From: Auanema rhodensis | Taxonomy: Eukaryota; Animalia; Nematoda | Reading direction: 5' to 3' | NCBI GenBank assembly: GCA_964057225.1 | Contig: OZ059897.1 | Coordinates: 15,314,001 to 15,378,000, forward strand | DNA length: 64,000 bases | Shown here: positions 1 to 20,472 of the stretch, one piece after another | Layout: the number at the start of each line of letters is the position of its first letter | Position numbering within the stretch: the stretch's first letter is position 1 | Notes under the pieces: generated by a model | Told to the model about the DNA's origin: nothing | The model's database searches: none | What the model saw: the letters and a program-made list of their open reading frames with translations, nothing else | Translations under genes and position numbers: made by a program

Positions 1-1349
1 AGTTTCGATACCAAGACTCAATGGAGCTACATCGACCAGGAGCACATCCTTTATTCCTTGATCTTGAATTCCGGAGAGCACAGCAGCTTGAACGGCAGCT
101 CCATAAGCGACAGCCTCATCAGGATTGATTGAACAATTGAGTTCACGACCGTTGAAGAAGTCTCGAAGAAGCTTCTGTACTCGAGGAATGCGAGTTGATC
201 CTCCAACGAGTACAATCTCGTGAATCTTGGATTTATCCAACTTGGCATCTGATAAGGCTCTTTCCACGGAATCTAAGGTTGAGCGGAACAAGTCGTTGCA
301 AAGTTCTTCGAATCGTGCTCTGGTTAGAGTAGAGCAGAAGTCGATGCCTTCATATAGGGAATCAACTTCAACAATGGCTTCAACAGAGCTCGAAAGAGTT
401 CTCTTGGCACGTTCGCAGGCAGTACGAAGTCTTCTGAGAGCTCGAGGATTCGAAGTGATGTCCTTGTTGTGTTTTCTCTTGAATTCAGCGACAAAGTGTT
501 GAAGAAGTCTCTGATCAAAGTCTTCTCCTCCAAGATGGGTGTTTCCGGAAGTTGAGAGAACTTCAAAGAGGGATCCCTCGCAAATCTGGAGAATGGAGAC
601 ATCGAAAGTTCCACCTCCGAGATCAAAGATGAGGACGTTGCGGTCTCCATCCATGCTCTTATCCAAGCCATAAGCAAGAGCAGCAGCTGTTGGTTCATTC
701 ACGATCCTGATAGCATTTAAACCAGCGATGGTAGCAGCATCCTTAGTTGCCTGACGTTGACTGTCATTGAAGTAGGCTGGAACGGTGATAACAGCATCTC
801 TCACAGAGTGTCCAAGATATGTTTCAGCAGTTTCTTTCATCTTAGTGAGGACCATGGCAGAGATTTCTTCAGGATTAAATTGGCGTTTCTCAGCCTTATA
901 TTCAACCTAAAACATAGAAATCAGTCGCGTTCATTGAAAATGAGTAAAATTGAAAAGAAAATTGGAAAGTCTGAATTTACTTACCTCTATTACTGGTTTT
1001 CCACCTTTGTTTTTAACAGCGAACGGCAAATTCTTGAGATCATCTTGGATTTGAGAATCATTGAATTGGCGACCAATCAATCGCTTTGCATCGAATACAG
1101 TACCCTGTGGATTACGGGCAGCTTGGTCCTTGGCTCCGTCACCAACTAATCGTTCAGAATCAGTGAAAGCTACATATGAGGGAGTGGTCTTATTTCCTTG
1201 ATCATTAGCTATGATTTCAACCTAAACAATCAAATTGAAATTTAAAGTTCATAAACTAAGAAAATTCAACTTACTTTTCCGTTTTGATAGACGGCTACAC
1301 AAGAATAGGTAGTCCCAAGATCAATTCCAATGGCTTTTGATGTCGACAT
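1..1349 (-). CDS. hsp-70: Cytosolic heat-inducible Hsp70, 5' part (copy 0; runs off the window)
   Basis: Reverse complement of 3803-5151 (mirror ORF coordinates sum to 5152). ATG at 1349 gives [18 protein letters not shown], with the same introns as the plus-strand copy. Confidence 0.96.
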
Positions 1350-1468
1350 TTTGGAATATCAATTGAATATAAAGAGTAAATGATAATAGTTTTGAATAGC
1401 AGTTGTAGAATGTAGATATCAGATAATTTTCTGAGATTCTGGGGTGCTGAATGATTGAACCACGGTTC

Positions 1469-1625
1469 TTATATATCAAAATTGGAGAATTATCGCGCTC
1501 TTTCGCGAAAGTTCTTCTGCGCTCTCTCATAAGCACACACTCTCTCGCACTTATCTAACATGACTCAGCCACAACAACAAGATGATGCTAGAAATTTCTC
1601 GGTCATTCTAGCTTATTCAAGAATC
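1469..1625 (-). promoter_or_regulatory. hsp70 promoter of copy 0: TATA, proximal HSE (1501-1515), TGAGTCA, distal HSE-like array
   Basis: Mirror image of the promoter at 3538-3683. Confidence 0.8.
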
Positions 1626-2003
1626 TTTTTTTTTCAAAATACTATCAAAATACATACAAACAAGTGCATTCAAAAGGAATAAAAAAATAATCCGTCATAA
1701 GTCTCATAATTTCCAAAATTATTCATTTGTTTGCTTTCTTTTTACTATAGAAGTCTTAGAAAAATGGTTATTAAGTCTAAGAACTGTTGGAAATACTGGA
1801 TAAATACTTAATAGAATCAAATCAATGAAACAAATCGTAAAATTATAAAAATAGATAATATTAGAGGAAACCCGGAACCTTCATTTTCTTTATCAAATCA
1901 TTTTGTTATTAGTGTCTGATGTAACATTAGAATTTAGTTATACTTAAAAGTTCTAAGCTTTTCTAAAATATTTATTAAGATTCATTGTTTTCAGACAAAC
2001 ATT

Positions 2004-3058
2004 ATGCTCAAATTATTTCTTTTGTTAATATGTTCTACTTCTATTGTAAGTTTTATAATTTCTTCTCAAAAGCATTATAATTAGAGTAAAATTAAATGTT
2101 CCGGGTTTTAGTCAGCTCAAGCGCTTGCTTTTGATTTCTCTCAACCAGCAAGCATTCAACAAATTCGACAAGTGGGACAAGATTCTGGAAGTATTATTAT
2201 AAGGTTTCTTAGACGATATTTTCATTTCTTAAGATAATATTATATTTTGAAGAGCACTTGCACCAACAGGACTGTTTGATACAAATGCTTGTAACAATAT
2301 TATTCATTCAGAATTCGGTAAAAGAAAATATCAAAATCATATCATACATCATAGATCACATGACAAAATTTTTCAGCACGAGTAAAAACATCAGTTTATA
2401 TGAGTCCATCACCAAGTGCTGATGCTAAACATCAAGTCGATTTATTAAATGAAGGATTATATGGTTGTAATATGATGTATAAATCATATTGGCTTCAAGT
2501 AATAACATATATTTGGAAAGTATTTCAAATGAAAAACAATCATTCAGGTTATCAATCCACTAAGATGGAAGGATGTAGCATCAAATATTAAATTTATTAC
2601 GGAAATTATAAACGTATCTCATAATGTATATAATCTTATCGAGATATATGTGAATTTATTTAAATATCTTTAGGTTTATCGTCAAACTGTTGGTATCTTT
2701 ACAACTATTGATGATTGGAATAAGATTACCGGTGGAGCAAATATAACTGAATCATCTGGTTTATATCATCCACTTTGGTAACTATGAGAATAATTTTTAT
2801 AAAATAACAAGAATTATTGCTATTGAAGGTATAAAGGAATAACAAATGAAACGAACTTTGATGATTTCAAGAGTTTTGGAGGATGGATTGCACCTTATAT
2901 GAAACAATATCAAACAGGAGTTGTAGACGCTCAAATCGTAGGAAACAGGTTTGAAGAAATTTCAAAACATATTTTTCTCCATTTGTTATTTCAGAAATTT
3001 GTATGAGCAGAATGATTTTATTACAAATGGTCAGTTCTTCGGAGAGAAACTTCAATAA
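2004..3058 (+). CDS. Secreted protist-type (GH25-like) lysozyme-like protein, multi-exon
   Basis: Spliced by eye: signal peptide MLKLFLLLICSTSI, then ALAFDFSQPAS, RALAPTGLFDTNACNNI, VYMSP, YWLQV, VGIFTTIDDWNKITG, HPLWY, NFDDFKSFGGWIAPYMKQY, ending GEKLQ*. These are hallmark nematode LYS-family motifs. Confidence 0.88.
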
Positions 3059-3537
3059 TTCAAAAACATAGTACTGAGTTTTAAAAAAAATAAATTTTTT
3101 TTCTTTTTTGTTAGAAAATTTAAATATTTTCATTTAACATTATTCATAAGATACACAAAAAAATAGAGATCATTGAAAATACGACAATAAATCTGAAACA
3201 ATAAAACTTTTTTCCCAAAAATCACATATTAAGAAGTATGAATGCATGGATTGTTTAAAGTCATCACTAAATATAAGCACAAATTTATATAATCTGAAAA
3301 GAAAAGGATTATTTTACTATTCCTCACAAATTTTCTCGGCATTTTCAATATACAGATCATGAGAAATTTTGCGTTGAAAAGAGGAGAAACATTTGTGAGT
3401 GTTTTGAAACATATTTTCTTTATATAACATTTTAGCGTTAATACTCGTTTTTCCAAAGTGCAAATCTCCAAAACACATCCAAGTTTTTCTATTTTTAACC
3501 ATAGCGACGGGAAAGTACAACCTTGTTTTCGAGAAGA

Positions 3538-3683
3538 AAGCTAGAATGACCGAGAAATTTCTAGCATCATCTTGTTGTTGTGGCTGAGTCATGTTAGATA
3601 AGTGCGAGAGAGTGTGTGCTTATGAGAGAGCGCAGAAGAACTTTCGCGAAAGAGCGCGATAATTCTCCAATTTTGATATATAA
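3538..3683 (+). promoter_or_regulatory. hsp70 promoter: perfect 3-unit HSE aGAActTTCgcGAAa (3637-3651), TATATAA (3677-3683), distal aGAAatTTCta, AP-1-like TGAGTCA (3585-3591), GATA site
   Basis: Canonical nGAAnnTTCnnGAAn about 25 bp upstream of a TATA box. The HSE recurs at 6821-6835, 10005-10019 and 13189-13203. Confidence 0.85.
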
Positions 3684-3802
3684 GAACCGTGGTTCAATCA
3701 TTCAGCACCCCAGAATCTCAGAAAATTATCTGATATCTACATTCTACAACTGCTATTCAAAACTATTATCATTTACTCTTTATATTCAATTGATATTCCA
3801 AA

Positions 3803-5915
3803 ATGTCGACATCAAAAGCCATTGGAATTGATCTTGGGACTACCTATTCTTGTGTAGCCGTCTATCAAAACGGAAAAGTAAGTTGAATTTTCTTAGTTTA
3901 TGAACTTTAAATTTCAATTTGATTGTTTAGGTTGAAATCATAGCTAATGATCAAGGAAATAAGACCACTCCCTCATATGTAGCTTTCACTGATTCTGAAC
4001 GATTAGTTGGTGACGGAGCCAAGGACCAAGCTGCCCGTAATCCACAGGGTACTGTATTCGATGCAAAGCGATTGATTGGTCGCCAATTCAATGATTCTCA
4101 AATCCAAGATGATCTCAAGAATTTGCCGTTCGCTGTTAAAAACAAAGGTGGAAAACCAGTAATAGAGGTAAGTAAATTCAGACTTTCCAATTTTCTTTTC
4201 AATTTTACTCATTTTCAATGAACGCGACTGATTTCTATGTTTTAGGTTGAATATAAGGCTGAGAAACGCCAATTTAATCCTGAAGAAATCTCTGCCATGG
4301 TCCTCACTAAGATGAAAGAAACTGCTGAAACATATCTTGGACACTCTGTGAGAGATGCTGTTATCACCGTTCCAGCCTACTTCAATGACAGTCAACGTCA
4401 GGCAACTAAGGATGCTGCTACCATCGCTGGTTTAAATGCTATCAGGATCGTGAATGAACCAACAGCTGCTGCTCTTGCTTATGGCTTGGATAAGAGCATG
4501 GATGGAGACCGCAACGTCCTCATCTTTGATCTCGGAGGTGGAACTTTCGATGTCTCCATTCTCCAGATTTGCGAGGGATCCCTCTTTGAAGTTCTCTCAA
4601 CTTCCGGAAACACCCATCTTGGAGGAGAAGACTTTGATCAGAGACTTCTTCAACACTTTGTCGCTGAATTCAAGAGAAAACACAACAAGGACATCACTTC
4701 GAATCCTCGAGCTCTCAGAAGACTTCGTACTGCCTGCGAACGTGCCAAGAGAACTCTTTCGAGCTCTGTTGAAGCCATTGTTGAAGTTGATTCCCTATAT
4801 GAAGGCATCGACTTCTGCTCTACTCTAACCAGAGCACGATTCGAAGAACTTTGCAACGACTTGTTCCGCTCAACCTTAGATTCCGTGGAAAGAGCCTTAT
4901 CAGATGCCAAGTTGGATAAATCCAAGATTCACGAGATTGTACTCGTTGGAGGATCAACTCGCATTCCTCGAGTACAGAAGCTTCTTCGAGACTTCTTCAA
5001 CGGTCGTGAACTCAATTGTTCAATCAATCCTGATGAGGCTGTCGCTTATGGAGCTGCCGTTCAAGCTGCTGTGCTCTCCGGAATTCAAGATCAAGGAATA
5101 AAGGATGTGCTCCTGGTCGATGTAGCTCCATTGAGTCTTGGTATCGAAACTGCTGGAGGAATTATGACCAACATCATCGAACGAAACACTCGTATTCCTA
5201 CCAAATCTAGCAAGATCTTTTCAACCTATTCTGATAATCAACCTGGAGTCACTATTCAAGTATTCGAAGGAGAACGTGCTATGACTCGTGACAACCACAG
5301 TCTGGGATTGTTTGAGCTTTCTGGAATCCCTCCTGCTCCAAGAGGTGTTCCTCAGATCGAAGTAACCTTCAACGTCGATGCTAACGGAATCCTGAACGTC
5401 AGCGCTGAGGACAAGTCTACCGGAAAACGCAATCAAATCACCATCAAGAACGAGAAAGGACGTCTGAGTCAAGCTGAGATTGAACGCATGCTGAGTGATG
5501 CGAAGAAGTTTGAGCATGAAGACAACATGACCCGTAATCGTACGACCGCTCGTAACAAGTTGGAATCCTATACTTATCAAGTAAGTTAACTTATATCATA
5601 TAGTTGAATTGATCTTATATTCTTTCTTTCCAGATAACTCAAGCACTAGATGAGCATGCAAACAAGTTGTCTTCTGAGGATCGTAATCGAGCACGAGCAG
5701 CTTGTGATGACACAATCAGATGGATTGATTCTAACCAAACTGCTGAGGTTGATGAATATGAGCACAAGCAGAAGGAGTTGGAACAGATTTGCCAATCTAT
5801 CATGGCTAAGATTCATCAAGCTGGATCACAGTCTTGTGGTAACCAACAGACCAACACAGGCTTCTCACCAGGAAATCATCCATCCAGTGGACCAACAGTC
5901 GAAGAAGTCGACTAA
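3803..5915 (+). CDS. hsp-70: Cytosolic heat-inducible Hsp70 copy 1 (about 642 aa; exons 3803-3877, 3931-4167, 4246-5580, 5634-5915)
   Basis: [46 protein letters not shown] and C-terminal GPTVEEVD, with three GT-AG introns. Resembles the C. elegans F44E5.4/5 and hsp-70 inducible class. Confidence 0.97.
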
Positions 5916-6385
5916 GTTTTAATGATTTACCTCGTTAGTCCTGTAAATATTTGCTTTTACCATGACGTTCCATTACTATACGGGTGTTTTAACTTATGTG
6001 TTTCCGTTGTATAGTATAGAATAACTTTATTAGTTTGAATTGTTAGTTTATATATGTATATTACTATGTTGTATATATAGTTGTTTTATAATAAATGTAT
6101 TTTTATTAAATTTTTAAATATTTAAGAAACACAACCGTTTTCTCCAAATAACATTTTCAAAATGAAACTTTTTTCTTTTTTTTCAAAATTTTATGTTAAT
6201 TTTTCATTTCTTTTTCATTATTTACGTCACTTGTCACGTAAATAACTAATTTACAATTCGATTTATCAATAATGAAAATCGATATTCTTTGCTTATTTTG
6301 TTTTGTGAACAATTTAAAATAATCTTTATTTTCATGGCCATGATACAAAATATAGTAAGTTAAGTAAGAATATTGTGAGTCCAAT

Positions 6386-6650
6386 TTATAATACGTGGAC
6401 TTTGCCTAATGCTTCCTCTAATGTGGTAATTTCGCCTATAATGATTACAACTTAAAATGAGTTTTGAAATGTAGAAAAACTCACTCTTGATCTCACGAGC
6501 CAGTCTCTGAATCTCAGAAACCTTATCCAACACCTCAACACGTTGAGTGTAAGCGTTATAACGAACTTGGAAAGGGCGTGGAATAGTAGAAGCCCAAGCC
6601 CTGTGGCTCAAATGGCTCAACTCTTGGCCGAAAATATTAATAAATATTAT
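6386..6650 (-). pseudogene. pah-1 3' fragment 1 (last two exons plus a deleted remnant of the previous exon)
   Basis: [26 protein letters not shown] and [15 protein letters not shown], as at 15938-16156. No upstream exons are present. Confidence 0.9.
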
Positions 6651-6986
6651 TTTTTATTCCTTTTGAATGCCTTTATTTGTATGTATTTTGATAGTATTTT
6701 GAAAAAAAAAGATTCTTGAATAAGCTAGAATGACCGAGAAATTTCTAGCATCATCTTGTTGTTGTGGCTGAGTCATGTTAGATAAGTGCGAGAGAGTGTG
6801 TGCTTATGAGAGAGCGCAGAAGAACTTTCGCGAAAGAGCGCGATAATTCTCCAATTTTGATATATAAGAACCGTGGTTCAATCATTCAGCACCCCAGAAT
6901 CTCAGAAAATTATCTGATATCTACATTCTACAACTGCTATTCAAAACTATTATCATTTACTCTTTATATTCAATTGATATTCCAAA

Positions 6987-9099
6987 ATGTCGACATCAAA
7001 AGCCATTGGAATTGATCTTGGGACTACCTATTCTTGTGTAGCCGTCTATCAAAACGGAAAAGTAAGTTGAATTTTCTTAGTTTATGAACTTTAAATTTCA
7101 ATTTGATTGTTTAGGTTGAAATCATAGCTAATGATCAAGGAAATAAGACCACTCCCTCATATGTAGCTTTCACTGATTCTGAACGATTAGTTGGTGACGG
7201 AGCCAAGGACCAAGCTGCCCGTAATCCACAGGGTACTGTATTCGATGCAAAGCGATTGATTGGTCGCCAATTCAATGATTCTCAAATCCAAGATGATCTC
7301 AAGAATTTGCCGTTCGCTGTTAAAAACAAAGGTGGAAAACCAGTAATAGAGGTAAGTAAATTCAGACTTTCCAATTTTCTTTTCAATTTTACTCATTTTC
7401 AATGAACGCGACTGATTTCTATGTTTTAGGTTGAATATAAGGCTGAGAAACGCCAATTTAATCCTGAAGAAATCTCTGCCATGGTCCTCACTAAGATGAA
7501 AGAAACTGCTGAAACATATCTTGGACACTCTGTGAGAGATGCTGTTATCACCGTTCCAGCCTACTTCAATGACAGTCAACGTCAGGCAACTAAGGATGCT
7601 GCTACCATCGCTGGTTTAAATGCTATCAGGATCGTGAATGAACCAACAGCTGCTGCTCTTGCTTATGGCTTGGATAAGAGCATGGATGGAGACCGCAACG
7701 TCCTCATCTTTGATCTCGGAGGTGGAACTTTCGATGTCTCCATTCTCCAGATTTGCGAGGGATCCCTCTTTGAAGTTCTCTCAACTTCCGGAAACACCCA
7801 TCTTGGAGGAGAAGACTTTGATCAGAGACTTCTTCAACACTTTGTCGCTGAATTCAAGAGAAAACACAACAAGGACATCACTTCGAATCCTCGAGCTCTC
7901 AGAAGACTTCGTACTGCCTGCGAACGTGCCAAGAGAACTCTTTCGAGCTCTGTTGAAGCCATTGTTGAAGTTGATTCCCTATATGAAGGCATCGACTTCT
8001 GCTCTACTCTAACCAGAGCACGATTCGAAGAACTTTGCAACGACTTGTTCCGCTCAACCTTAGATTCCGTGGAAAGAGCCTTATCAGATGCCAAGTTGGA
8101 TAAATCCAAGATTCACGAGATTGTACTCGTTGGAGGATCAACTCGCATTCCTCGAGTACAGAAGCTTCTTCGAGACTTCTTCAACGGTCGTGAACTCAAT
8201 TGTTCAATCAATCCTGATGAGGCTGTCGCTTATGGAGCTGCCGTTCAAGCTGCTGTGCTCTCCGGAATTCAAGATCAAGGAATAAAGGATGTGCTCCTGG
8301 TCGATGTAGCTCCATTGAGTCTTGGTATCGAAACTGCTGGAGGAATTATGACCAACATCATCGAACGAAACACTCGTATTCCTACCAAATCTAGCAAGAT
8401 CTTTTCAACCTATTCTGATAATCAACCTGGAGTCACTATTCAAGTATTCGAAGGAGAACGTGCTATGACTCGTGACAACCACAGTCTGGGATTGTTTGAG
8501 CTTTCTGGAATCCCTCCTGCTCCAAGAGGTGTTCCTCAGATCGAAGTAACCTTCAACGTCGATGCTAACGGAATCCTGAACGTCAGCGCTGAGGACAAGT
8601 CTACCGGAAAACGCAATCAAATCACCATCAAGAACGAGAAAGGACGTCTGAGTCAAGCTGAGATTGAACGCATGCTGAGTGATGCGAAGAAGTTTGAGCA
8701 TGAAGACAACATGACCCGTAATCGTACGACCGCTCGTAACAAGTTGGAATCCTATACTTATCAAGTAAGTTAACTTATATCATATAGTTGAATTGATCTT
8801 ATATTCTTTCTTTCCAGATAACTCAAGCACTAGATGAGCATGCAAACAAGTTGTCTTCTGAGGATCGTAATCGAGCACGAGCAGCTTGTGATGACACAAT
8901 CAGATGGATTGATTCTAACCAAACTGCTGAGGTTGATGAATATGAGCACAAGCAGAAGGAGTTGGAACAGATTTGCCAATCTATCATGGCTAAGATTCAT
9001 CAAGCTGGATCACAGTCTTGTGGTAACCAACAGACCAACACAGGCTTCTCACCAGGAAATCATCCATCCAGTGGACCAACAGTCGAAGAAGTCGACTAA
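6987..9099 (+). CDS. hsp-70: Hsp70 copy 2
   Basis: Same translation and introns as copy 1 (+3184). Confidence 0.95.
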
Positions 9100-9569
9100 G
9101 TTTTAATGATTTACCTCGTTAGTCCTGTAAATATTTGCTTTTACCATGACGTTCCATTACTATACGGGTGTTTTAACTTATGTGTTTCCGTTGTATAGTA
9201 TAGAATAACTTTATTAGTTTGAATTGTTAGTTTATATATGTATATTACTATGTTGTATATATAGTTGTTTTATAATAAATGTATTTTTATTAAATTTTTA
9301 AATATTTAAGAAACACAACCGTTTTCTCCAAATAACATTTTCAAAATGAAACTTTTTTCTTTTTTTTCAAAATTTTATGTTAATTTTTCATTTCTTTTTC
9401 ATTATTTACGTCACTTGTCACGTAAATAACTAATTTACAATTCGATTTATCAATAATGAAAATCGATATTCTTTGCTTATTTTGTTTTGTGAACAATTTA
9501 AAATAATCTTTATTTTCATGGCCATGATACAAAATATAGTAAGTTAAGTAAGAATATTGTGAGTCCAAT

Positions 9570-9834
9570 TTATAATACGTGGACTTTGCCTAATGCTTCC
9601 TCTAATGTGGTAATTTCGCCTATAATGATTACAACTTAAAATGAGTTTTGAAATGTAGAAAAACTCACTCTTGATCTCACGAGCCAGTCTCTGAATCTCA
9701 GAAACCTTATCCAACACCTCAACACGTTGAGTGTAAGCGTTATAACGAACTTGGAAAGGGCGTGGAATAGTAGAAGCCCAAGCCCTGTGGCTCAAATGGC
9801 TCAACTCTTGGCCGAAAATATTAATAAATATTAT
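9570..9834 (-). pseudogene. pah-1 3' fragment 2
   Basis: As fragment 1, +3184. Confidence 0.9.
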
Positions 9835-10170
9835 TTTTTATTCCTTTTGAATGCCTTTATTTGTATGTATTTTGATAGTATTTTGAAAAAAAAAGATTCT
9901 TGAATAAGCTAGAATGACCGAGAAATTTCTAGCATCATCTTGTTGTTGTGGCTGAGTCATGTTAGATAAGTGCGAGAGAGTGTGTGCTTATGAGAGAGCG
10001 CAGAAGAACTTTCGCGAAAGAGCGCGATAATTCTCCAATTTTGATATATAAGAACCGTGGTTCAATCATTCAGCACCCCAGAATCTCAGAAAATTATCTG
10101 ATATCTACATTCTACAACTGCTATTCAAAACTATTATCATTTACTCTTTATATTCAATTGATATTCCAAA

Positions 10171-12283
10171 ATGTCGACATCAAAAGCCATTGGAATTGAT
10201 CTTGGGACTACCTATTCTTGTGTAGCCGTCTATCAAAACGGAAAAGTAAGTTGAATTTTCTTAGTTTATGAACTTTAAATTTCAATTTGATTGTTTAGGT
10301 TGAAATCATAGCTAATGATCAAGGAAATAAGACCACTCCCTCATATGTAGCTTTCACTGATTCTGAACGATTAGTTGGTGACGGAGCCAAGGACCAAGCT
10401 GCCCGTAATCCACAGGGTACTGTATTCGATGCAAAGCGATTGATTGGTCGCCAATTCAATGATTCTCAAATCCAAGATGATCTCAAGAATTTGCCGTTCG
10501 CTGTTAAAAACAAAGGTGGAAAACCAGTAATAGAGGTAAGTAAATTCAGACTTTCCAATTTTCTTTTCAATTTTACTCATTTTCAATGAACGCGACTGAT
10601 TTCTATGTTTTAGGTTGAATATAAGGCTGAGAAACGCCAATTTAATCCTGAAGAAATCTCTGCCATGGTCCTCACTAAGATGAAAGAAACTGCTGAAACA
10701 TATCTTGGACACTCTGTGAGAGATGCTGTTATCACCGTTCCAGCCTACTTCAATGACAGTCAACGTCAGGCAACTAAGGATGCTGCTACCATCGCTGGTT
10801 TAAATGCTATCAGGATCGTGAATGAACCAACAGCTGCTGCTCTTGCTTATGGCTTGGATAAGAGCATGGATGGAGACCGCAACGTCCTCATCTTTGATCT
10901 CGGAGGTGGAACTTTCGATGTCTCCATTCTCCAGATTTGCGAGGGATCCCTCTTTGAAGTTCTCTCAACTTCCGGAAACACCCATCTTGGAGGAGAAGAC
11001 TTTGATCAGAGACTTCTTCAACACTTTGTCGCTGAATTCAAGAGAAAACACAACAAGGACATCACTTCGAATCCTCGAGCTCTCAGAAGACTTCGTACTG
11101 CCTGCGAACGTGCCAAGAGAACTCTTTCGAGCTCTGTTGAAGCCATTGTTGAAGTTGATTCCCTATATGAAGGCATCGACTTCTGCTCTACTCTAACCAG
11201 AGCACGATTCGAAGAACTTTGCAACGACTTGTTCCGCTCAACCTTAGATTCCGTGGAAAGAGCCTTATCAGATGCCAAGTTGGATAAATCCAAGATTCAC
11301 GAGATTGTACTCGTTGGAGGATCAACTCGCATTCCTCGAGTACAGAAGCTTCTTCGAGACTTCTTCAACGGTCGTGAACTCAATTGTTCAATCAATCCTG
11401 ATGAGGCTGTCGCTTATGGAGCTGCCGTTCAAGCTGCTGTGCTCTCCGGAATTCAAGATCAAGGAATAAAGGATGTGCTCCTGGTCGATGTAGCTCCATT
11501 GAGTCTTGGTATCGAAACTGCTGGAGGAATTATGACCAACATCATCGAACGAAACACTCGTATTCCTACCAAATCTAGCAAGATCTTTTCAACCTATTCT
11601 GATAATCAACCTGGAGTCACTATTCAAGTATTCGAAGGAGAACGTGCTATGACTCGTGACAACCACAGTCTGGGATTGTTTGAGCTTTCTGGAATCCCTC
11701 CTGCTCCAAGAGGTGTTCCTCAGATCGAAGTAACCTTCAACGTCGATGCTAACGGAATCCTGAACGTCAGCGCTGAGGACAAGTCTACCGGAAAACGCAA
11801 TCAAATCACCATCAAGAACGAGAAAGGACGTCTGAGTCAAGCTGAGATTGAACGCATGCTGAGTGATGCGAAGAAGTTTGAGCATGAAGACAACATGACC
11901 CGTAATCGTACGACCGCTCGTAACAAGTTGGAATCCTATACTTATCAAGTAAGTTAACTTATATCATATAGTTGAATTGATCTTATATTCTTTCTTTCCA
12001 GATAACTCAAGCACTAGATGAGCATGCAAACAAGTTGTCTTCTGAGGATCGTAATCGAGCACGAGCAGCTTGTGATGACACAATCAGATGGATTGATTCT
12101 AACCAAACTGCTGAGGTTGATGAATATGAGCACAAGCAGAAGGAGTTGGAACAGATTTGCCAATCTATCATGGCTAAGATTCATCAAGCTGGATCACAGT
12201 CTTGTGGTAACCAACAGACCAACACAGGCTTCTCACCAGGAAATCATCCATCCAGTGGACCAACAGTCGAAGAAGTCGACTAA
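10171..12283 (+). CDS. hsp-70: Hsp70 copy 3
   Basis: Same as copy 1 (+6368). Confidence 0.95.
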
Positions 12284-12753
12284 GTTTTAATGATTTACCT
12301 CGTTAGTCCTGTAAATATTTGCTTTTACCATGACGTTCCATTACTATACGGGTGTTTTAACTTATGTGTTTCCGTTGTATAGTATAGAATAACTTTATTA
12401 GTTTGAATTGTTAGTTTATATATGTATATTACTATGTTGTATATATAGTTGTTTTATAATAAATGTATTTTTATTAAATTTTTAAATATTTAAGAAACAC
12501 AACCGTTTTCTCCAAATAACATTTTCAAAATGAAACTTTTTTCTTTTTTTTCAAAATTTTATGTTAATTTTTCATTTCTTTTTCATTATTTACGTCACTT
12601 GTCACGTAAATAACTAATTTACAATTCGATTTATCAATAATGAAAATCGATATTCTTTGCTTATTTTGTTTTGTGAACAATTTAAAATAATCTTTATTTT
12701 CATGGCCATGATACAAAATATAGTAAGTTAAGTAAGAATATTGTGAGTCCAAT

Positions 12754-13018
12754 TTATAATACGTGGACTTTGCCTAATGCTTCCTCTAATGTGGTAATTT
12801 CGCCTATAATGATTACAACTTAAAATGAGTTTTGAAATGTAGAAAAACTCACTCTTGATCTCACGAGCCAGTCTCTGAATCTCAGAAACCTTATCCAACA
12901 CCTCAACACGTTGAGTGTAAGCGTTATAACGAACTTGGAAAGGGCGTGGAATAGTAGAAGCCCAAGCCCTGTGGCTCAAATGGCTCAACTCTTGGCCGAA
13001 AATATTAATAAATATTAT
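12754..13018 (-). pseudogene. pah-1 3' fragment 3
   Basis: As fragment 1, +6368. Confidence 0.9.
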
Positions 13019-13354
13019 TTTTTATTCCTTTTGAATGCCTTTATTTGTATGTATTTTGATAGTATTTTGAAAAAAAAAGATTCTTGAATAAGCTAGAATG
13101 ACCGAGAAATTTCTAGCATCATCTTGTTGTTGTGGCTGAGTCATGTTAGATAAGTGCGAGAGAGTGTGTGCTTATGAGAGAGCGCAGAAGAACTTTCGCG
13201 AAAGAGCGCGATAATTCTCCAATTTTGATATATAAGAACCGTGGTTCAATCATTCAGCACCCCAGAATCTCAGAAAATTATCTGATATCTACATTCTACA
13301 ACTGCTATTCAAAACTATTATCATTTACTCTTTATATTCAATTGATATTCCAAA

Positions 13355-15467
13355 ATGTCGACATCAAAAGCCATTGGAATTGATCTTGGGACTACCTATT
13401 CTTGTGTAGCCGTCTATCAAAACGGAAAAGTAAGTTGAATTTTCTTAGTTTATGAACTTTAAATTTCAATTTGATTGTTTAGGTTGAAATCATAGCTAAT
13501 GATCAAGGAAATAAGACCACTCCCTCATATGTAGCTTTCACTGATTCTGAACGATTAGTTGGTGACGGAGCCAAGGACCAAGCTGCCCGTAATCCACAGG
13601 GTACTGTATTCGATGCAAAGCGATTGATTGGTCGCCAATTCAATGATTCTCAAATCCAAGATGATCTCAAGAATTTGCCGTTCGCTGTTAAAAACAAAGG
13701 TGGAAAACCAGTAATAGAGGTAAGTAAATTCAGACTTTCCAATTTTCTTTTCAATTTTACTCATTTTCAATGAACGCGACTGATTTCTATGTTTTAGGTT
13801 GAATATAAGGCTGAGAAACGCCAATTTAATCCTGAAGAAATCTCTGCCATGGTCCTCACTAAGATGAAAGAAACTGCTGAAACATATCTTGGACACTCTG
13901 TGAGAGATGCTGTTATCACCGTTCCAGCCTACTTCAATGACAGTCAACGTCAGGCAACTAAGGATGCTGCTACCATCGCTGGTTTAAATGCTATCAGGAT
14001 CGTGAATGAACCAACAGCTGCTGCTCTTGCTTATGGCTTGGATAAGAGCATGGATGGAGACCGCAACGTCCTCATCTTTGATCTCGGAGGTGGAACTTTC
14101 GATGTCTCCATTCTCCAGATTTGCGAGGGATCCCTCTTTGAAGTTCTCTCAACTTCCGGAAACACCCATCTTGGAGGAGAAGACTTTGATCAGAGACTTC
14201 TTCAACACTTTGTCGCTGAATTCAAGAGAAAACACAACAAGGACATCACTTCGAATCCTCGAGCTCTCAGAAGACTTCGTACTGCCTGCGAACGTGCCAA
14301 GAGAACTCTTTCGAGCTCTGTTGAAGCCATTGTTGAAGTTGATTCCCTATATGAAGGCATCGACTTCTGCTCTACTCTAACCAGAGCACGATTCGAAGAA
14401 CTTTGCAACGACTTGTTCCGCTCAACCTTAGATTCCGTGGAAAGAGCCTTATCAGATGCCAAGTTGGATAAATCCAAGATTCACGAGATTGTACTCGTTG
14501 GAGGATCAACTCGCATTCCTCGAGTACAGAAGCTTCTTCGAGACTTCTTCAACGGTCGTGAACTCAATTGTTCAATCAATCCTGATGAGGCTGTCGCTTA
14601 TGGAGCTGCCGTTCAAGCTGCTGTGCTCTCCGGAATTCAAGATCAAGGAATAAAGGATGTGCTCCTGGTCGATGTAGCTCCATTGAGTCTTGGTATCGAA
14701 ACTGCTGGAGGAATTATGACCAACATCATCGAACGAAACACTCGTATTCCTACCAAATCTAGCAAGATCTTTTCAACCTATTCTGATAATCAACCTGGAG
14801 TCACTATTCAAGTATTCGAAGGAGAACGTGCTATGACTCGTGACAACCACAGTCTGGGATTGTTTGAGCTTTCTGGAATCCCTCCTGCTCCAAGAGGTGT
14901 TCCTCAGATCGAAGTAACCTTCAACGTCGATGCTAACGGAATCCTGAACGTCAGCGCTGAGGACAAGTCTACCGGAAAACGCAATCAAATCACCATCAAG
15001 AACGAGAAAGGACGTCTGAGTCAAGCTGAGATTGAACGCATGCTGAGTGATGCGAAGAAGTTTGAGCATGAAGACAACATGACCCGTAATCGTACGACCG
15101 CTCGTAACAAGTTGGAATCCTATACTTATCAAGTAAGTTAACTTATATCATATAGTTGAATTGATCTTATATTCTTTCTTTCCAGATAACTCAAGCACTA
15201 GATGAGCATGCAAACAAGTTGTCTTCTGAGGATCGTAATCGAGCACGAGCAGCTTGTGATGACACAATCAGATGGATTGATTCTAACCAAACTGCTGAGG
15301 TTGATGAATATGAGCACAAGCAGAAGGAGTTGGAACAGATTTGCCAATCTATCATGGCTAAGATTCATCAAGCTGGATCACAGTCTTGTGGTAACCAACA
15401 GACCAACACAGGCTTCTCACCAGGAAATCATCCATCCAGTGGACCAACAGTCGAAGAAGTCGACTAA
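13355..15467 (+). CDS. hsp-70: Hsp70 copy 4
   Basis: Same as copy 1 (+9552). Confidence 0.95.
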
Positions 15468-15937
15468 GTTTTAATGATTTACCTCGTTAGTCCTGTAAAT
15501 ATTTGCTTTTACCATGACGTTCCATTACTATACGGGTGTTTTAACTTATGTGTTTCCGTTGTATAGTATAGAATAACTTTATTAGTTTGAATTGTTAGTT
15601 TATATATGTATATTACTATGTTGTATATATAGTTGTTTTATAATAAATGTATTTTTATTAAATTTTTAAATATTTAAGAAACACAACCGTTTTCTCCAAA
15701 TAACATTTTCAAAATGAAACTTTTTTCTTTTTTTTCAAAATTTTATGTTAATTTTTCATTTCTTTTTCATTATTTACGTCACTTGTCACGTAAATAACTA
15801 ATTTACAATTCGATTTATCAATAATGAAAATCGATATTCTTTGCTTATTTTGTTTTGTGAACAATTTAAAATAATCTTTATTTTCATGGCCATGATACAA
15901 AATATAGTAAGTTAAGTAAGAATATTGTGAGTCCAAT

Positions 15938-18900
15938 TTATAATACGTGGACTTTGCCTAATGCTTCCTCTAATGTGGTAATTTCGCCTATAATGATTAC
16001 AACTTAAAATGAGTTTTGAAATGTAGAAAAACTCACTCTTGATCTCACGAGCCAGTCTCTGAATCTCAGAAACCTTATCCAACACCTCAACACGTTGAGT
16101 GTAAGCGTTATAACGAACTTGGAAAGGGCGTGGAATAGTAGAAGCCCAAGCCCTGTAAATTTATAAATAAATATTAATATATATTCTATATATTAAAAAT
16201 TTTGTTTTATATATATTTATGTATAAATAACTTACTTTAATTTATTCTTTGCGTTAGCGAATGACTCAGCTAAGAAGTATTTTGGCTGGTACTCAGTGAT
16301 TGGATATTTAGTTTTAGATGTGATAGAAGGCTCAAATGGCTCAACTACTGGCTGAAAATATTAATTAATATTATTTTATTATTCAATATCTATACCTTAT
16401 CACTGAGGGAATATTGTAATTCACCAAATGAACTGAGAAGACCGGCTCCATATGCTTTCTTCTCTCCATCTTCATCACAAAGTCCAAACTCAATGGTGAA
16501 CCAGTAAAGCTATACATATCATTTTATATTTTTAAATAACTTTTCAAACGTACAGTAGCCAATTGTTCAATAACATCATCTGTAGCTCCAAGTGAAGCTA
16601 ATCCAATTTCTTGTGAAAATTGGGCAAATTCAACATCGGCGAATAGAGGTACATGACCTAATAATTCGTGGCAAATATCACTGCAAATTTGATTGAATTT
16701 AAAGATTATCATTAAGAATAGTGTTTACGGTTCCGGAGTATATTTAGGATCTGAATGATGACGGATGTACTGAGTGGAATGGAAAACACGGAAAGCTAAA
16801 CCAGCAAGGAAATCACGAGATGACAATAATCCAGCAACTGGTCGAAGTGTAAATCCAGTACAATCTATAATAAATAATTATAAAAACAATTCTTTATTAT
16901 TATAATATTTATAATTTTATTTACATACCATGTAGGAAATCAGAAATATCTTGAAGTTGTGGAATGCTATCAGGGCCAAATCCACAATTTTGTTGAAGAA
17001 GAGGAAAGATGTAATTGAATTCTTTACAAGCATGTGTCTTATACAAGGTAGTTAATTGATCATAAACAGTCTTCCAAGTACTAATTTCTTGTTCAGAATA
17101 TTCAATTCTTGGAATTCTATCTCCACTATAATATAAATATAAATAATAATAATAATAATATAACTAACTGTTTATAGTTAAAAGCAATATCAGCAAAGTA
17201 TTTACGACGTTGTCTATATACTTCATCAGTGAATCCCTTCAAAATTATTAAAATTAGTAAATGATAAATTAAAATTAATTAAATGAATATCAGAAATACT
17301 ATTCAGAAATGTTTTAACTAACAGGGTGATCAGAATCCAATTCAGCTCCATAACTCAAAATACGGTTAGCAAACTGATCAATGTCAGAAATTTTTTTTGG
17401 GAACCATGGAACAGAATCTAAAAAAGTAAAAAATATATAAATAAATATGAATATTTTACCTTTATTTTGTTTACTTTTAGCATTCCAATCTTGAACAATC
17501 AATCCATCACCATGTTTTTTAAATAATTGAATAATTTCTTCAATTTTCTTTTGATCAGCATCAGCTTCACATTCAACCAAAATTTCGTAGCATCCACTAT
17601 GATTCTTTGATGGTCTTGATTCAATATGAGATAAATTAACTTGATGGGTCTTAAAATAAAAAAAATTAGTTAATGATCAAAGTACATGCAAAATTCTTTA
17701 AAATTTTAATTAAATCAGTTTTTTATATTCTTTTAAAACATTTTTTTTGTTAAATTGATATGTAAGATGATATATAAGATGATAAATGAAAATTCTGTCT
17801 ATCTATTGTACTTATAGATTAATTAAATTAAAAATTTTGATTAATTTAATTATATTAATTATTAATTCATTTCATTTAATAAAAAAAAAAGAAAGAAAAG
17901 ATATTAATTTCTTAAATCAAGTTTTCATAAATCAATTTAATTATTAAAGAAATATTTATTAGATTTATATTTATTATTATATTATTTCAATTAAAATAAT
18001 ATTCAATTGCTATTTCTTTAAAATAATTTAAGGATTTGTATATTTTTTTCTTAAATGATACGGTAATTTAATGTTTGAATTTTAAACATTTTCTTTCTTT
18101 TTATCAGAAAATACATAAAATTTCATTTAAGTGTTAAAACCTTTTCATACCATAAATGTTTTTTTTTATTTATTTAATTCTAATTCTTCTTTTCAATACT
18201 ATACAAACTATACATATCATTTATCTTACAATTTATTCAGAATATGTTCTTTTCTCCTTTTTTAACTTTATATTTCTCTTTTCTCATGATAATGATGCAA
18301 TTAGAATTCTTTTTAACAACACTCTGACGATCACATTTCCAAAAGATATTAGATGTCATTGAAAAGACAACTAATTTGATTACCTTTTTTAGACTTTTGC
18401 TATCCAAAAAGATAATTAAACACATTTTATAGAAGATGTCATAAACTCTAATGAAGACGAAGAAAAAGAAAAAAAAGGCAACGATGACGAACGAAGTTAA
18501 CGACGTCAAAAGACAACGTGGTGGAAGACGTCAAATGATAAAAGTACTCAATTTCATCTGAGATCAACTGATCATCAGCAGAGAGAACCAGAGGTCACGG
18601 GTCTCAATTCATGACGAAGACGTGACAAAAGCAGGAATCCGATATCGCGTGAATAAGCTGATGAACCGATGTTAACAAACTTGGCAAATCGTATTCTAGA
18701 GCTTTTCACATGAAAATTATTATAAATTTTAGGAGAAAAAGCTCAAATATAGAAAATAACTGAAAATCTTTAACTATATCCAAATAAATATATTAATTAT
18801 AATATATTATATGATATAATGATTGAAATGAAGAAATTTGTATATCGCGGGGGATGTAAATCAAGATTGAGATAATTGAAGCAAGAAATGGCTTTTATTC

Positions 18901-19606
18901 AATTGATATGTGAATTTTAGAAAAACATCTTAAATGAATATAATAATATTATAAAAAATAAAATAAAATATGTTTTAACTATATTGTTTTTTGATTATTA
19001 TCATCTAATTAATTGATTAATTGAACACTTATTCAATATGTTCAAATATTGTTTTTCCTTCTTTATATTTAAGTTTATTGAAATAAACATTCTATAGACA
19101 GGTTATAGAATCTTTGTTTGAATTCAGACAAAATTACAAATAAAGTATTCTTTTCCTTTTTATTATTTTTATTTAATTAATTTTTAAATTAATTGTTGTT
19201 TCATAGTATACCTGGAATACTCGAAGAGTTTCAGCTAATGCTCCAGCTTGTTCCTTCAAAGTAAAAATGATGGTTGTACGTCCACCATCTTTGTTGATAT
19301 CAGCAACGTATGATTCCATTGCGTATTTCTGCAGAAAAAAATTGATATAATATGAAAGAAGTTTTATCAAATTGTTCTTGAGATTATATAAATCTTTATA
19401 TTTATATAATATTTTATTTAAATATTTAAATAATTAGTAAGAAGATAGAGAAAATAAATGAATTATATGAAAAGTTATGATAAAATGATAGACAAGAAAA
19501 TGGATTTATATGTATAACTGAGCAGAATAATCAAGCTTTAACATGAGAATTTTGATAATTTTTCAAAACTTACAAGTAAATCTTCATTTATTTGTGCAGG
19601 AGGCAT
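15938..19606 (-). CDS. pah-1: Phenylalanine-4-hydroxylase (ACT domain + biopterin-dependent hydroxylase domain), multi-exon
   Basis: [11 protein letters not shown]|[117 protein letters not shown], ending GKVHVL*. Confidence 0.96.
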
Positions 19607-20355
19607 GCTTCAAACACTTAACGTTAGGAATGAGAATTTGGAAAGCAAAATGACGGTAATAGATAGGCGGAGCTTATTTAGCAAGTCGTGCTAGAGTCTT
19701 TGATTATCACGTGTCTTAAGAAGAAAAAAAGGAAAAAGAAAAAAAAAGTGAGATGAAGATGATATAGTTGACAATCTGATAGACAAATTAAATTATCAGT
19801 TTATGATTAAACATTATAATTAATGAATTAACAAGTCACATTATAGGAGAAAAGACAAGAGGTGGTGAGAGGGGTGGCGAATGGTGGTAAGGATTCCATT
19901 TAATTTTGATAAACAGGTAAGAAGTTTTGTAATGGGGGCTCATGTCATTAGAACAGAATGAGAGCAATTACAAACGATTGTCAAGCAAATTTAATAGCTG
20001 AAAACTTGAATATAAATGGTCCGTGGTATGCATGTTCAAAGAAGGATTCACAAAAAATTTGACGACACATCAAGTTTGCAATACAAAAAGTTTGTCTTAA
20101 AAACTAACTTGTCACTGGCAGATGGAGATGTTCAAACCACGATAAGGACCTGAACATTAGAAGCTCATAGAGTATGCTCGTAAGAACTTGAATTTTGAAA
20201 AGAAAAAATTATGAAAAAGAGTAATAAAACGGACTGAATGCTTTTACATCATGTTTTTGATGATTTTGATCAAAATTCATTTCATCAAACCGTGTCAAAA
20301 GACGTTAATGAGATGAGGATAAGAACAGTGTAGTATGAAAGAGAATTTAAAGCTT

Positions 20356-20357
<2 letters not shown>

Positions 20358-20450
<93 letters not shown>

Positions 20451-20472
20451 AAGAGAGAGAGAGAAAGAGAGA
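20358..20472. repeat. (GA)n microsatellite, about 115 bp
   Basis: Direct observation. Confidence 0.97.

What the first reader, a model, noticed from the sequence alone, without database searches (positions are those of the whole stretch)
1615..3537. Evidence that the lysozyme-containing spacer has flipped between the inverted hsp70 arms
Seen: the roughly 75 bp upstream of tandem copies 2-4 (e.g. 6645-6721, attattttttattccttttgaatgc...gattcttgaat) does not match the flank of copy 1 (upstream of 3538). It matches the reverse complement of 1615-1691, the flank of the opposite-strand copy. Inference: when the tandem duplication arose, the 1.9-kb spacer lay in the other orientation and was later inverted by recombination between the arms. 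The lysozyme-like gene would then sit on an invertible segment. An alternative is a template switch or gene conversion from copy 0.
Basis: partly seen in the sequence, partly recalled or inferred. Interest (0 to 1): 0.75.

Follow-up and report, generated by a model that had tools for sequence, protein, structure and literature searches.

The report
Displaced flank marks flipped hsp70 spacer
In a nematode heat-shock gene cluster, a 77-base flank that belongs in front of the first tandem hsp70 copy lies instead, reversed, on the far side of a 1.9-kb spacer, which most simply means the spacer was turned around once; this is an ordinary kind of rearrangement and nothing here shows it is still flipping.

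Summary
One hsp70 copy lies on the minus strand. A 1,923-bp single-copy spacer follows, then four tandem 3,184-bp units. All five copies share 2,741 bp at 100% identity. The 72-77 bp in front of units 2-4 (block F) is missing in front of copy 1. It lies, reverse-complemented, next to the minus-strand copy at 1615-1691, with 3 clustered substitutions and one T-run indel.

The tandem joint was mapped. The array ends in an intron of the neighbouring aromatic amino-acid hydroxylase gene. It joins F through 8 bp of microhomology, beside a 172-bp deletion.

The simplest history is that F was the original 5' flank of the duplicated unit and that spacer plus F was inverted later (about 0.6). This could be recombination between the arms (about 0.45) or an inversion that created the left arm as a breakpoint duplication (about 0.15). 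A template switch onto the inverted copy's flank predicts the same sequence (about 0.2).

Ongoing flipping could not be tested, because the tool for reads and sister assemblies was closed. A flip would leave the gene's surroundings unchanged for 2.7 kb on each side.

The spacer gene is GH25-lysozyme-like by exon-wise comparison. A second paralogue lies just left of the window. This is a known kind of event, of modest interest.

The parts
1..1614 (-). hsp70 copy 0: the inner part of the left inverted arm. The arm continues left of the window to -1126, 2,741 bp in all. Start codon at 1349-1347; the coding sequence ends at about -763.
   Evidence: ORFs in L008 ending in ...GPTVEEVD
1615..1691 (-). 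F0: the 77-bp flank block, reverse complement of the block in front of units 2-4. It differs at 1661, 1664 and 1665 and by one T in a T run. Its inner end carries a heat-shock-element-like TTCnnGAA.
1692..3537 (.). The rest of the spacer. It is single-copy in the genome and shows no homology between its two ends.
2004..3006 (+). lysA: a gene of about 8 exons, GH25-lysozyme-like, head to head with hsp70 copy 0 (655 bp between start codons). The exon model is mine, drawn by eye from frames and splice motifs.
   Evidence: for the model. Exons 4, 6 and 7 are collinear with the PF01183-bearing protein P0138. Pfam is silent on single exons.
3538..6649 (+). Tandem unit 1 (hsp70 copy 1, coding sequence 3803-5915). 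It lacks F and starts directly against the right end of the spacer.
6650..9833 (+). Tandem unit 2, which begins with F (6645/6650-6721).
9834..13017 (+). Tandem unit 3, which begins with F (9829-9905).
13018..16156 (+). Tandem unit 4, which begins with F (13013-13089). It ends at unit position 3139, where the intact neighbouring gene continues.
6279..6604 (-). T'': the 3' end of the hydroxylase gene (last exons, stop near 6388, poly-A signal near 6330). Every unit carries it and copy 0 does not. Repeated at 9463-9788, 12647-12972 and 15831-16156.
   Evidence: sequence
6605..6649 (-). J1: a 45-bp scrap of the hydroxylase gene (intron end plus 23 nt of exon), 91% identical to native 16329-16373, with the splice acceptor destroyed. 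It joins F through the shared ATTATTTT. Repeated at 9789-9833 and 12973-13017.
16157..16373 (-). Native hydroxylase sequence at the right edge of the array: 172 bp missing from units 1-3 (16157-16328), then the native counterpart of J1.
15900..19400 (-). Gene N: biopterin-dependent aromatic amino-acid hydroxylase, tail to tail with the last hsp70 copy.
   Evidence: PF00351 on two exons, E = 1.8e-20 and 1.6e-8

Best explanation
F (77 bp) was the native 5' flank of the hsp70 unit that was tandemly duplicated. The duplication ran from F to an intron of the downstream hydroxylase gene and was sealed through 8 bp of microhomology. Unequal exchange then raised it to four units. Afterwards the segment between the two inverted hsp70 copies (spacer plus F) was inverted. 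That carried F to the minus-strand copy and brought the other spacer end against copy 1. The likeliest mechanism is intrachromatid homologous recombination between the 2.74-kb identical arms (about 0.45). Less likely (about 0.15) is a single staggered-break inversion of [spacer + F + hsp70], which would itself have produced copy 0 as an inverted breakpoint duplication. Shown: the anatomy, the displaced flank, the joint. Inferred: the order of events and the mechanism. The flip is expected to be neutral, because the lysozyme-like gene keeps the same neighbours for 2.7 kb on both sides.
For: The first unit of the array lacks F, and F lies reversed at the far end of the spacer, in register with an identical hsp70 arm. 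F occurs nowhere else in the genome. The right edge of the array is an ordinary duplication joint in the hydroxylase intron with ATTATTTT microhomology, so the matching left edge should be the outer end of F. The arms are 2,741 bp, 100% identical and 1.9 kb apart, which is an ideal substrate. Such spacers differ in orientation in about half of primate species comparisons (PMC8327919). Adjacent inverted hsp70 pairs homogenised by gene conversion are known in Caenorhabditis (PMC3966223). F forms a run of heat-shock-element units in 5-bp phase with those of the arm, whereas the copy-1 flank's TTCgaGAA is 1 nt out of phase. This suggests that F|hsp70 is the older, functional junction. The assembly very probably comes from HiFi reads, which span a 2.7-kb arm, so mis-orientation is unlikely.
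Against: A template switch gives the same sequence. A second lysozyme-like paralogue (lysB) lies on the same strand just left of copy 0. The present orientation of lysA is therefore the one expected for tandem paralogues, which means either an even number of flips or no flip at all. All five copies are identical, including homopolymer runs, so the structure is either very young (several rare events in a short time) or strongly homogenised.
Confidence: 0.6

Rival explanations
1. Template switching when the tandem joint formed (MMBIR/FoSTeS type). The spacer never moved. Replication ran from copy 1 into the hydroxylase gene, skipped 172 bp and copied 45 bp. It then switched through ATTATTTT onto the flank of the inverted copy 0, copied F and part of the arm, and returned to copy 1 through the perfect homology. 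F in units 2-4 would then be a templated insert taken from copy 0.
For: The joint is complex: a 172-bp deletion, a 45-bp scrap, 8 bp of microhomology and a T-run indel. There are two clusters of substitutions, each about 20-25 nt past a switch point and each starting with AC->CT. There are no differences in the 3,100 bp elsewhere (clustering P = 0.007). Such mutation-laden joints are what I recall for replicative repair (my knowledge, not checked in a paper here). lysB and lysA lie in direct orientation now, as expected if lysA never flipped.
Against: It needs two extra switches (onto an inverted template and back), where a plain tandem duplication plus a common kind of inversion suffices. The differences at the joint are equally well explained as array edges that escape homogenisation. 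The substituted sites coincide with segments bounded by non-homology.
Confidence: 0.2
2. Both inverted arms originally included F, and copy 1 later lost its F by deletion or replacement.
For: Both kinds of flank carry a TTCnnGAA within 12 bp of the arm boundary, which could be a remnant of longer homology.
Against: There is no significant similarity between the 200-440 bp upstream of copy 1 and F or the mirror part of the spacer. The inner limit of the inverted repeat would also have to coincide, to within a few bases, with the left breakpoint of the tandem duplication.
Confidence: 0.05
3. The assembler mis-oriented the spacer, or collapsed a mixed population. In the animals F sits in front of copy 1.
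For: The spacer is bounded by perfectly identical 2.7-kb arms. The same window contains perfect palindromes whose centres an earlier agent could not confirm in reads (s1-373157).
Against: A read only has to span one 2.74-kb arm plus a few hundred bases to fix the orientation. The assembly that matches this genome's size was built from PacBio HiFi and Hi-C data of an inbred line.
Confidence: 0.07

Closest known systems
Spacer inversion in large palindromes by recombination between arms (primate X/Y palindromes, FLNA-EMD; PMC8327919, PMC3723533)
   Same: Two near-identical inverted arms kept alike, a unique spacer holding a gene, and a flip expected to be neutral.
   Different: The arms here are only 2.7 kb, in a nematode autosome-type region. 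The evidence for a flip is indirect (a displaced flank preserved by a tandem array), not two observed orientations.
Inversions flanked by inverted duplications from staggered breaks (Drosophila; Ranz et al. 2007, PMC1885836)
   Same: The present order [rc(hsp70) - rc(F) - spacer - hsp70] is exactly L - rc(B) - rc(A) - B, with a duplication at one breakpoint only. That was the commoner case in that study.
   Different: The duplicated piece would be 2.74 kb, against at most about 1.9 kb (median 321 bp) in Drosophila. The inverted unique part is very small (2 kb). No outgroup shows the un-inverted state.
Inverted and tandem clusters of inducible hsp70 genes under concerted evolution (the C. elegans adjacent inverted hsp70 pair via PMC3966223; Drosophila hsp70 from my knowledge)
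   Same: A head-to-head hsp70 pair plus tandem copies, identical through coding sequence, introns, promoter and 3' flank.
   Different: An unrelated gene (lysozyme-like) sits between the divergent copies. The tandem units drag along a dead 3' fragment of the neighbouring hydroxylase gene.
Complex duplication joints from replicative template switching (MMBIR/FoSTeS)
   Same: Microhomology, a small deletion and clustered point changes beside the joint.
   Different: No inverted triplicated segment is present. Only a 77-bp patch would be templated from the inverted copy.

Membership tests
Recombination-invertible spacer between inverted repeats | Two inverted arms of high identity | tested here: met
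   2,741 bp, 0 mismatches
Recombination-invertible spacer between inverted repeats | Unique asymmetric spacer between the arms | tested here: met
   1,923 bp, one copy in 181 Mb; its ends are unrelated
Recombination-invertible spacer between inverted repeats | Both orientations seen in reads, strains or related species | not testable with these tools
There is no second copy or alternative contig in the assembly. The relative's hsp70 genes are on contigs of about 2.6 kb.
Recombination-invertible spacer between inverted repeats | An independent marker of the opposite orientation in the past | tested here: inconclusive
   The displaced F block fits this, but a template switch predicts the same.
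Staggered-break inversion with breakpoint duplication | Inverted copies of one breakpoint region at the two ends of the inverted segment | tested here: met
   The order rc(hsp70)-rc(F)-spacer-hsp70 matches the model (PMC1885836).
Staggered-break inversion with breakpoint duplication | Un-inverted single-copy state in an outgroup | not testable with these tools
   No access to sister genomes
Staggered-break inversion with breakpoint duplication | Second short duplication at the other breakpoint (optional) | tested here: not met
   No match between the spacer and the 8.9 kb left of copy 0 beyond chance 13-17-mers
Replicative (MMBIR-type) complex joint | Microhomology at the joint, with small deletions or point changes close by | tested here: met
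   ATTATTTT shared; 172-bp deletion; 7 substitutions and 1 indel within 71 bp, none in the remaining roughly 3,100 bp
GH25 (Chalaropsis/protist-type) lysozyme | Match to Pfam PF01183 | tested here: not met
No hit for any single exon or in a six-frame scan of the genome. The exons are 22-41 aa.
GH25 (Chalaropsis/protist-type) lysozyme | Collinear similarity to proteins that carry PF01183 | tested here: met
   Exon 4 aligns to P0138 residues 77-111 (E = 0.02), exon 6 to 144-170 (E = 8e-5), exon 7 to 178-197 (E = 6e-9). The exon 7 motif also finds trichostrongylid proteins.
GH25 (Chalaropsis/protist-type) lysozyme | Catalytic Asp-x-Glu after the conserved Trp-Leu | tested here: inconclusive
   P0138 reads WLDIE. 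lysA reads WLQV then V at my exon joint, and lysB reads WLQ then VV. This depends on my splice model.
Cytosolic inducible Hsp70 | Hsp70 domain, C-terminal EEVD, heat-shock elements upstream | tested here: met
   The 430-aa exon is 86-88% identical to Auanema sp. JU1783 Hsp70 proteins carrying PF00012. It ends in EEVD. A perfect 3-unit heat-shock element lies at 3637.

The most novel reading that the evidence does not exclude
The spacer flips back and forth today between the two hsp70 arms, with both orientations present in a worm population. The tandem array would then be a dated fossil of one state. That would allow a flip rate and an arm-to-arm conversion rate to be measured for a short nuclear palindrome in a nematode.
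Probability: 0.2. Interest if true: 0.4.

Novelty: new member of a known kind. Interest (0 to 1): 0.3.

Why it matters
It is a tidy case in which a tandem array preserves the flank a gene had before a nearby inversion, so a rearrangement can be inferred from one genome. It adds a nematode example to palindrome-spacer inversions and to concerted evolution of hsp70 clusters. It also flags a locus where long reads could measure the flipping of a short palindrome. It does not point to a new mechanism or to a regulatory switch.

Tried and rejected
2. A search for an alternative haplotig with the other orientation: the spacer occurs once.
3. Hidden homology between the copy-1 flank and F or the mirror half of the spacer: none above shuffles. 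One 17/19 match to the outer end of F at 3305-3323 is not significant.
4. A second breakpoint duplication between the spacer and the left flank: none.
5. Lysozyme identity was sought by Pfam on exons, PF01183 over the genome, the ESM Atlas and the PDB with exons. All were blank. The PDB with the relative P0123 gave only a weak GH25 SleM hit (E = 0.05).
6. The HMMER search of 1.84 billion representatives with exon 7 gave four hits without Pfam GH25. The link to PF01183 came only through a word search from the hit P0122.
7. The 61-aa ORF at 3320-3502 (-): no family and no paralogue, so it is probably not a gene.
8. The joined (spliced) lysA protein was not built or searched.
9. One-event models that create the inverted copy and all tandem units together were rejected, because the same 172-bp skip would have to recur three times.

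Full report
**What the window is**

The sequence is eukaryotic, with short gtaagt...ttcag introns. The 430-aa main exon of the repeated gene is 86-88% identical to two Hsp70 proteins of Auanema sp. JU1783, followed by Caenorhabditis proteins at 79-81%. The assembly has 181 Mb in 112 contigs. This fits the 180-Mb germline assembly of the Auanema rhodense APS4 inbred line, built from PacBio HiFi and Hi-C data (bioRxiv 10.64898/2026.08.27.747507). Earlier notes of this scan name the same species. I treat the species name as very likely, not proven.

**Anatomy**

I fetched 10 kb to the left of the window (L008) and compared one tandem unit with everything. From left to right:
- **lysB.** A lysozyme-like gene on the plus strand at window -2112 to -1304.
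- **hsp70 copy 0.** On the minus strand. It is identical to the tandem units from -1126 to 1614 (2,741 bp, 0 mismatches). This span covers the promoter with its heat-shock elements, the whole coding sequence and 365 bp beyond the stop codon.
- **Block F0.** 1615-1691.
- **The rest of the spacer.** 1692-3537. It holds a second lysozyme-like gene, lysA, on the plus strand (about 2004-3006).
- **Four tandem units of 3,184 bp.** All are 100% identical: 3538-6649 (lacking F), 6650-9833, 9834-13017 and 13018-16156.
- **Gene N.** An intact biopterin-dependent aromatic amino-acid hydroxylase gene on the minus strand (PF00351).

This cluster holds the only five copies of this hsp70 type in the genome. 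The next relatives are 73% and 61% identical.

**The observation**

- The 72 nt in front of units 2-4 align without gaps to the reverse complement of 1615-1686. With one gap in a T run the match reaches 1691/6646.
- The block occurs only at these four places in the genome.
- The sequence in front of copy 1 is unrelated to it.
- F0 differs from the unit copies at 1661, 1664 and 1665 and by one T. Three substitutions within a 5-bp span out of 72 has P = 0.007. The contrast of 3 differences in 72 bp against 0 in 2,741 bp is significant (Fisher P = 1.6e-5).

- Each unit carries the 3' end of gene N (T'', 326 bp, 100% identical to the native copy beside unit 4).
- In units 1-3 this is followed by J1, a 45-bp piece that is 91% identical to native 16329-16373. 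J1 covers the end of an intron plus 23 nt of exon.
- The 172 bp that separate these two parts in the native gene are missing from the units.
- One of the four J1 substitutions destroys the splice acceptor (CAG to CGG), so the unit version is the derived one.
- J1 joins F where both parents read ATTATTTT, about 15 bp if imperfect matches are allowed.
- The array therefore runs from the outer end of F to this intron of N, and was sealed by microhomology.
- All sequence differences in the whole cluster lie within 71 bp around this joint (6605-6675).
- Both substitution clusters begin with AC->CT and lie about 20-25 nt beyond a junction point.

Two readings fit these differences. They may be errors of repair synthesis made when the joint formed, in a young cluster. 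Or they may be array edges that escape homogenisation, in an old cluster kept uniform by conversion and unequal exchange. I cannot choose between them.

**What history gives this picture**

In a tandem array the first unit keeps the native upstream flank. Here the first unit lacks F, and F lies reversed at the other end of the spacer, attached to an identical hsp70 arm. Four histories produce exactly this sequence.

(A) Recombination between pre-existing arms.
- The inverted pair existed, and the array formed while F lay in front of copy 1.
- The substrate is ideal: 2.74-kb perfect arms 1.9 kb apart.
- In primate X palindromes the spacer orientation differs in about half of species comparisons and is polymorphic within species (PMC8327919).
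- An adjacent inverted hsp70 pair under gene conversion is known in C. elegans (PMC3966223).

(G) An inversion that created the left arm.
- There was no inverted copy at first. A single inversion of [spacer + F + hsp70] with a staggered break across the hsp70 segment produced copy 0 as an inverted breakpoint duplication.
- The present order equals L - rc(B) - rc(A) - B of the Drosophila model (PMC1885836).
- This needs fewer events. However, it needs a 2.74-kb duplication, against at most about 1.9 kb in that study.
- It also needs an ancestral lysA that pointed against lysB.

(C) Template switch.
- The spacer never moved, and the joint was made by a template switch onto the flank of copy 0, followed by a return through homology.
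- The complex, mutation-laden joint speaks for it. So does the present direct orientation of lysB and lysA, which is the usual state of tandem paralogues.
- The two extra switches speak against it.

(D) F once on both arms.
- F was once on both arms and was lost at copy 1.
- This needs the inner limit of the inverted repeat to coincide with the tandem breakpoint.
- No residual homology supports it.

Other points bear on the choice.
- No second breakpoint duplication was found.
- F supplies two heat-shock-element units in 5-bp phase with those of the arm, whereas the TTCgaGAA in front of copy 1 is one base out of phase. This is a weak hint that F|hsp70 is the older junction.
- Weighing the cost of each event and the lysB orientation, I put an inversion after the tandem duplication at about 0.6 (A about 0.45, G about 0.15). 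I put the template switch at about 0.2, loss of F at 0.05, assembly mis-orientation at about 0.07, and the rest on other histories.

**Is it an invertible element?**

- Nothing here shows present-day flipping. The assembly has one copy of the spacer and no alternative contig.
- The closest public relative has its hsp70 genes on contigs of about 2.6 kb, so its arrangement could not have been read anyway.
- Even if flipping occurs, both arms are identical for 2.74 kb. lysA would stay head to head with an hsp70 promoter at the same distance (655 bp between start codons), so I expect no switch-like effect.

**The spacer gene**

- Pfam finds nothing in single exons of 22-41 aa. A six-frame scan of the genome with PF01183 is also blank.
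- An HMMER search of 1.84 billion representative proteins with exon 7 found a Teladorsagia protein and a protist-like two-domain protein.
- A word search from the Teladorsagia protein reached proteins that carry PF01183.
- Exons 4, 6 and 7 of lysA align collinearly with one of these, P0138, with E = 0.02, 8e-5 and 6e-9.
- 'GH25-type lysozyme-like' is therefore supported, although family membership by Pfam's own model is not shown.
- Where P0138 has WLDIE, both lysA and lysB read WLQVV under my splice model, so activity should not be assumed.

**Verdict**

The mechanism (recombination between the arms) is likely but not separable here from an arm-creating inversion or a template switch, and the idea of a continuing flip-flop is untested. 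The phenomenon belongs to well-known classes: palindrome spacer inversion, inversion with breakpoint duplication, and concerted evolution of hsp70 clusters. Interest is modest.

Noticed in passing
L008:7888-8696 (window -2112 to -1304), + strand: A second lysozyme-like gene (lysB). Six exons are collinear with lysA exons 2-7, at 36-63% amino-acid identity per exon. It ends about 170 bp from the outer boundary of hsp70 copy 0. lysB and lysA now point the same way, with the minus-strand hsp70 between them. A third weak match lies 185 kb to the right (G000:C5:15499400).
   Followed up: partly
window 6279-6649, 9463-9833, 12647-13017: Units 1-3 each carry a dead 3' fragment of the hydroxylase gene (last exons plus a 45-bp scrap of an upstream intron/exon border), with a 172-bp internal deletion and a destroyed splice acceptor. 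Only the copy after unit 4 continues into the full gene.
   Followed up: yes
window 6623-6629 and 6671-6675 (and the same sites in units 3 and 4): The two substitution clusters at the tandem joint both start with AC->CT. Each lies about 20-25 nt past a junction point. This may be a signature of error-prone synthesis after template switches.
   Followed up: partly
window 3527-3537 versus 6711-6721: Both kinds of flank place a TTCnnGAA heat-shock-element dimer within 12 bp of the arm boundary. In F it is in 5-bp phase with the arm's elements. In front of copy 1 it is one base out of phase.
   Followed up: partly
window 3320-3502, - strand: A 61-aa ORF starting 36 bp from the copy-1 promoter boundary. 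It has no Pfam family and no paralogue in the genome, so it is probably not a gene.
   Followed up: yes
window 6222-6245 (in every hsp70 3' flank): A near-palindrome, ATTTACGTCAC TT GTCACGTAAAT, with CRE/bZIP-like TTACGT cores, about 310 bp after the hsp70 stop codon.
   Followed up: no
window 20295-20499 and L008:4237-4620: Long (GA/CT)n microsatellites on both sides of the cluster.
   Followed up: no
The neighbourhood seems prone to inverted-duplication events.
   Followed up: no
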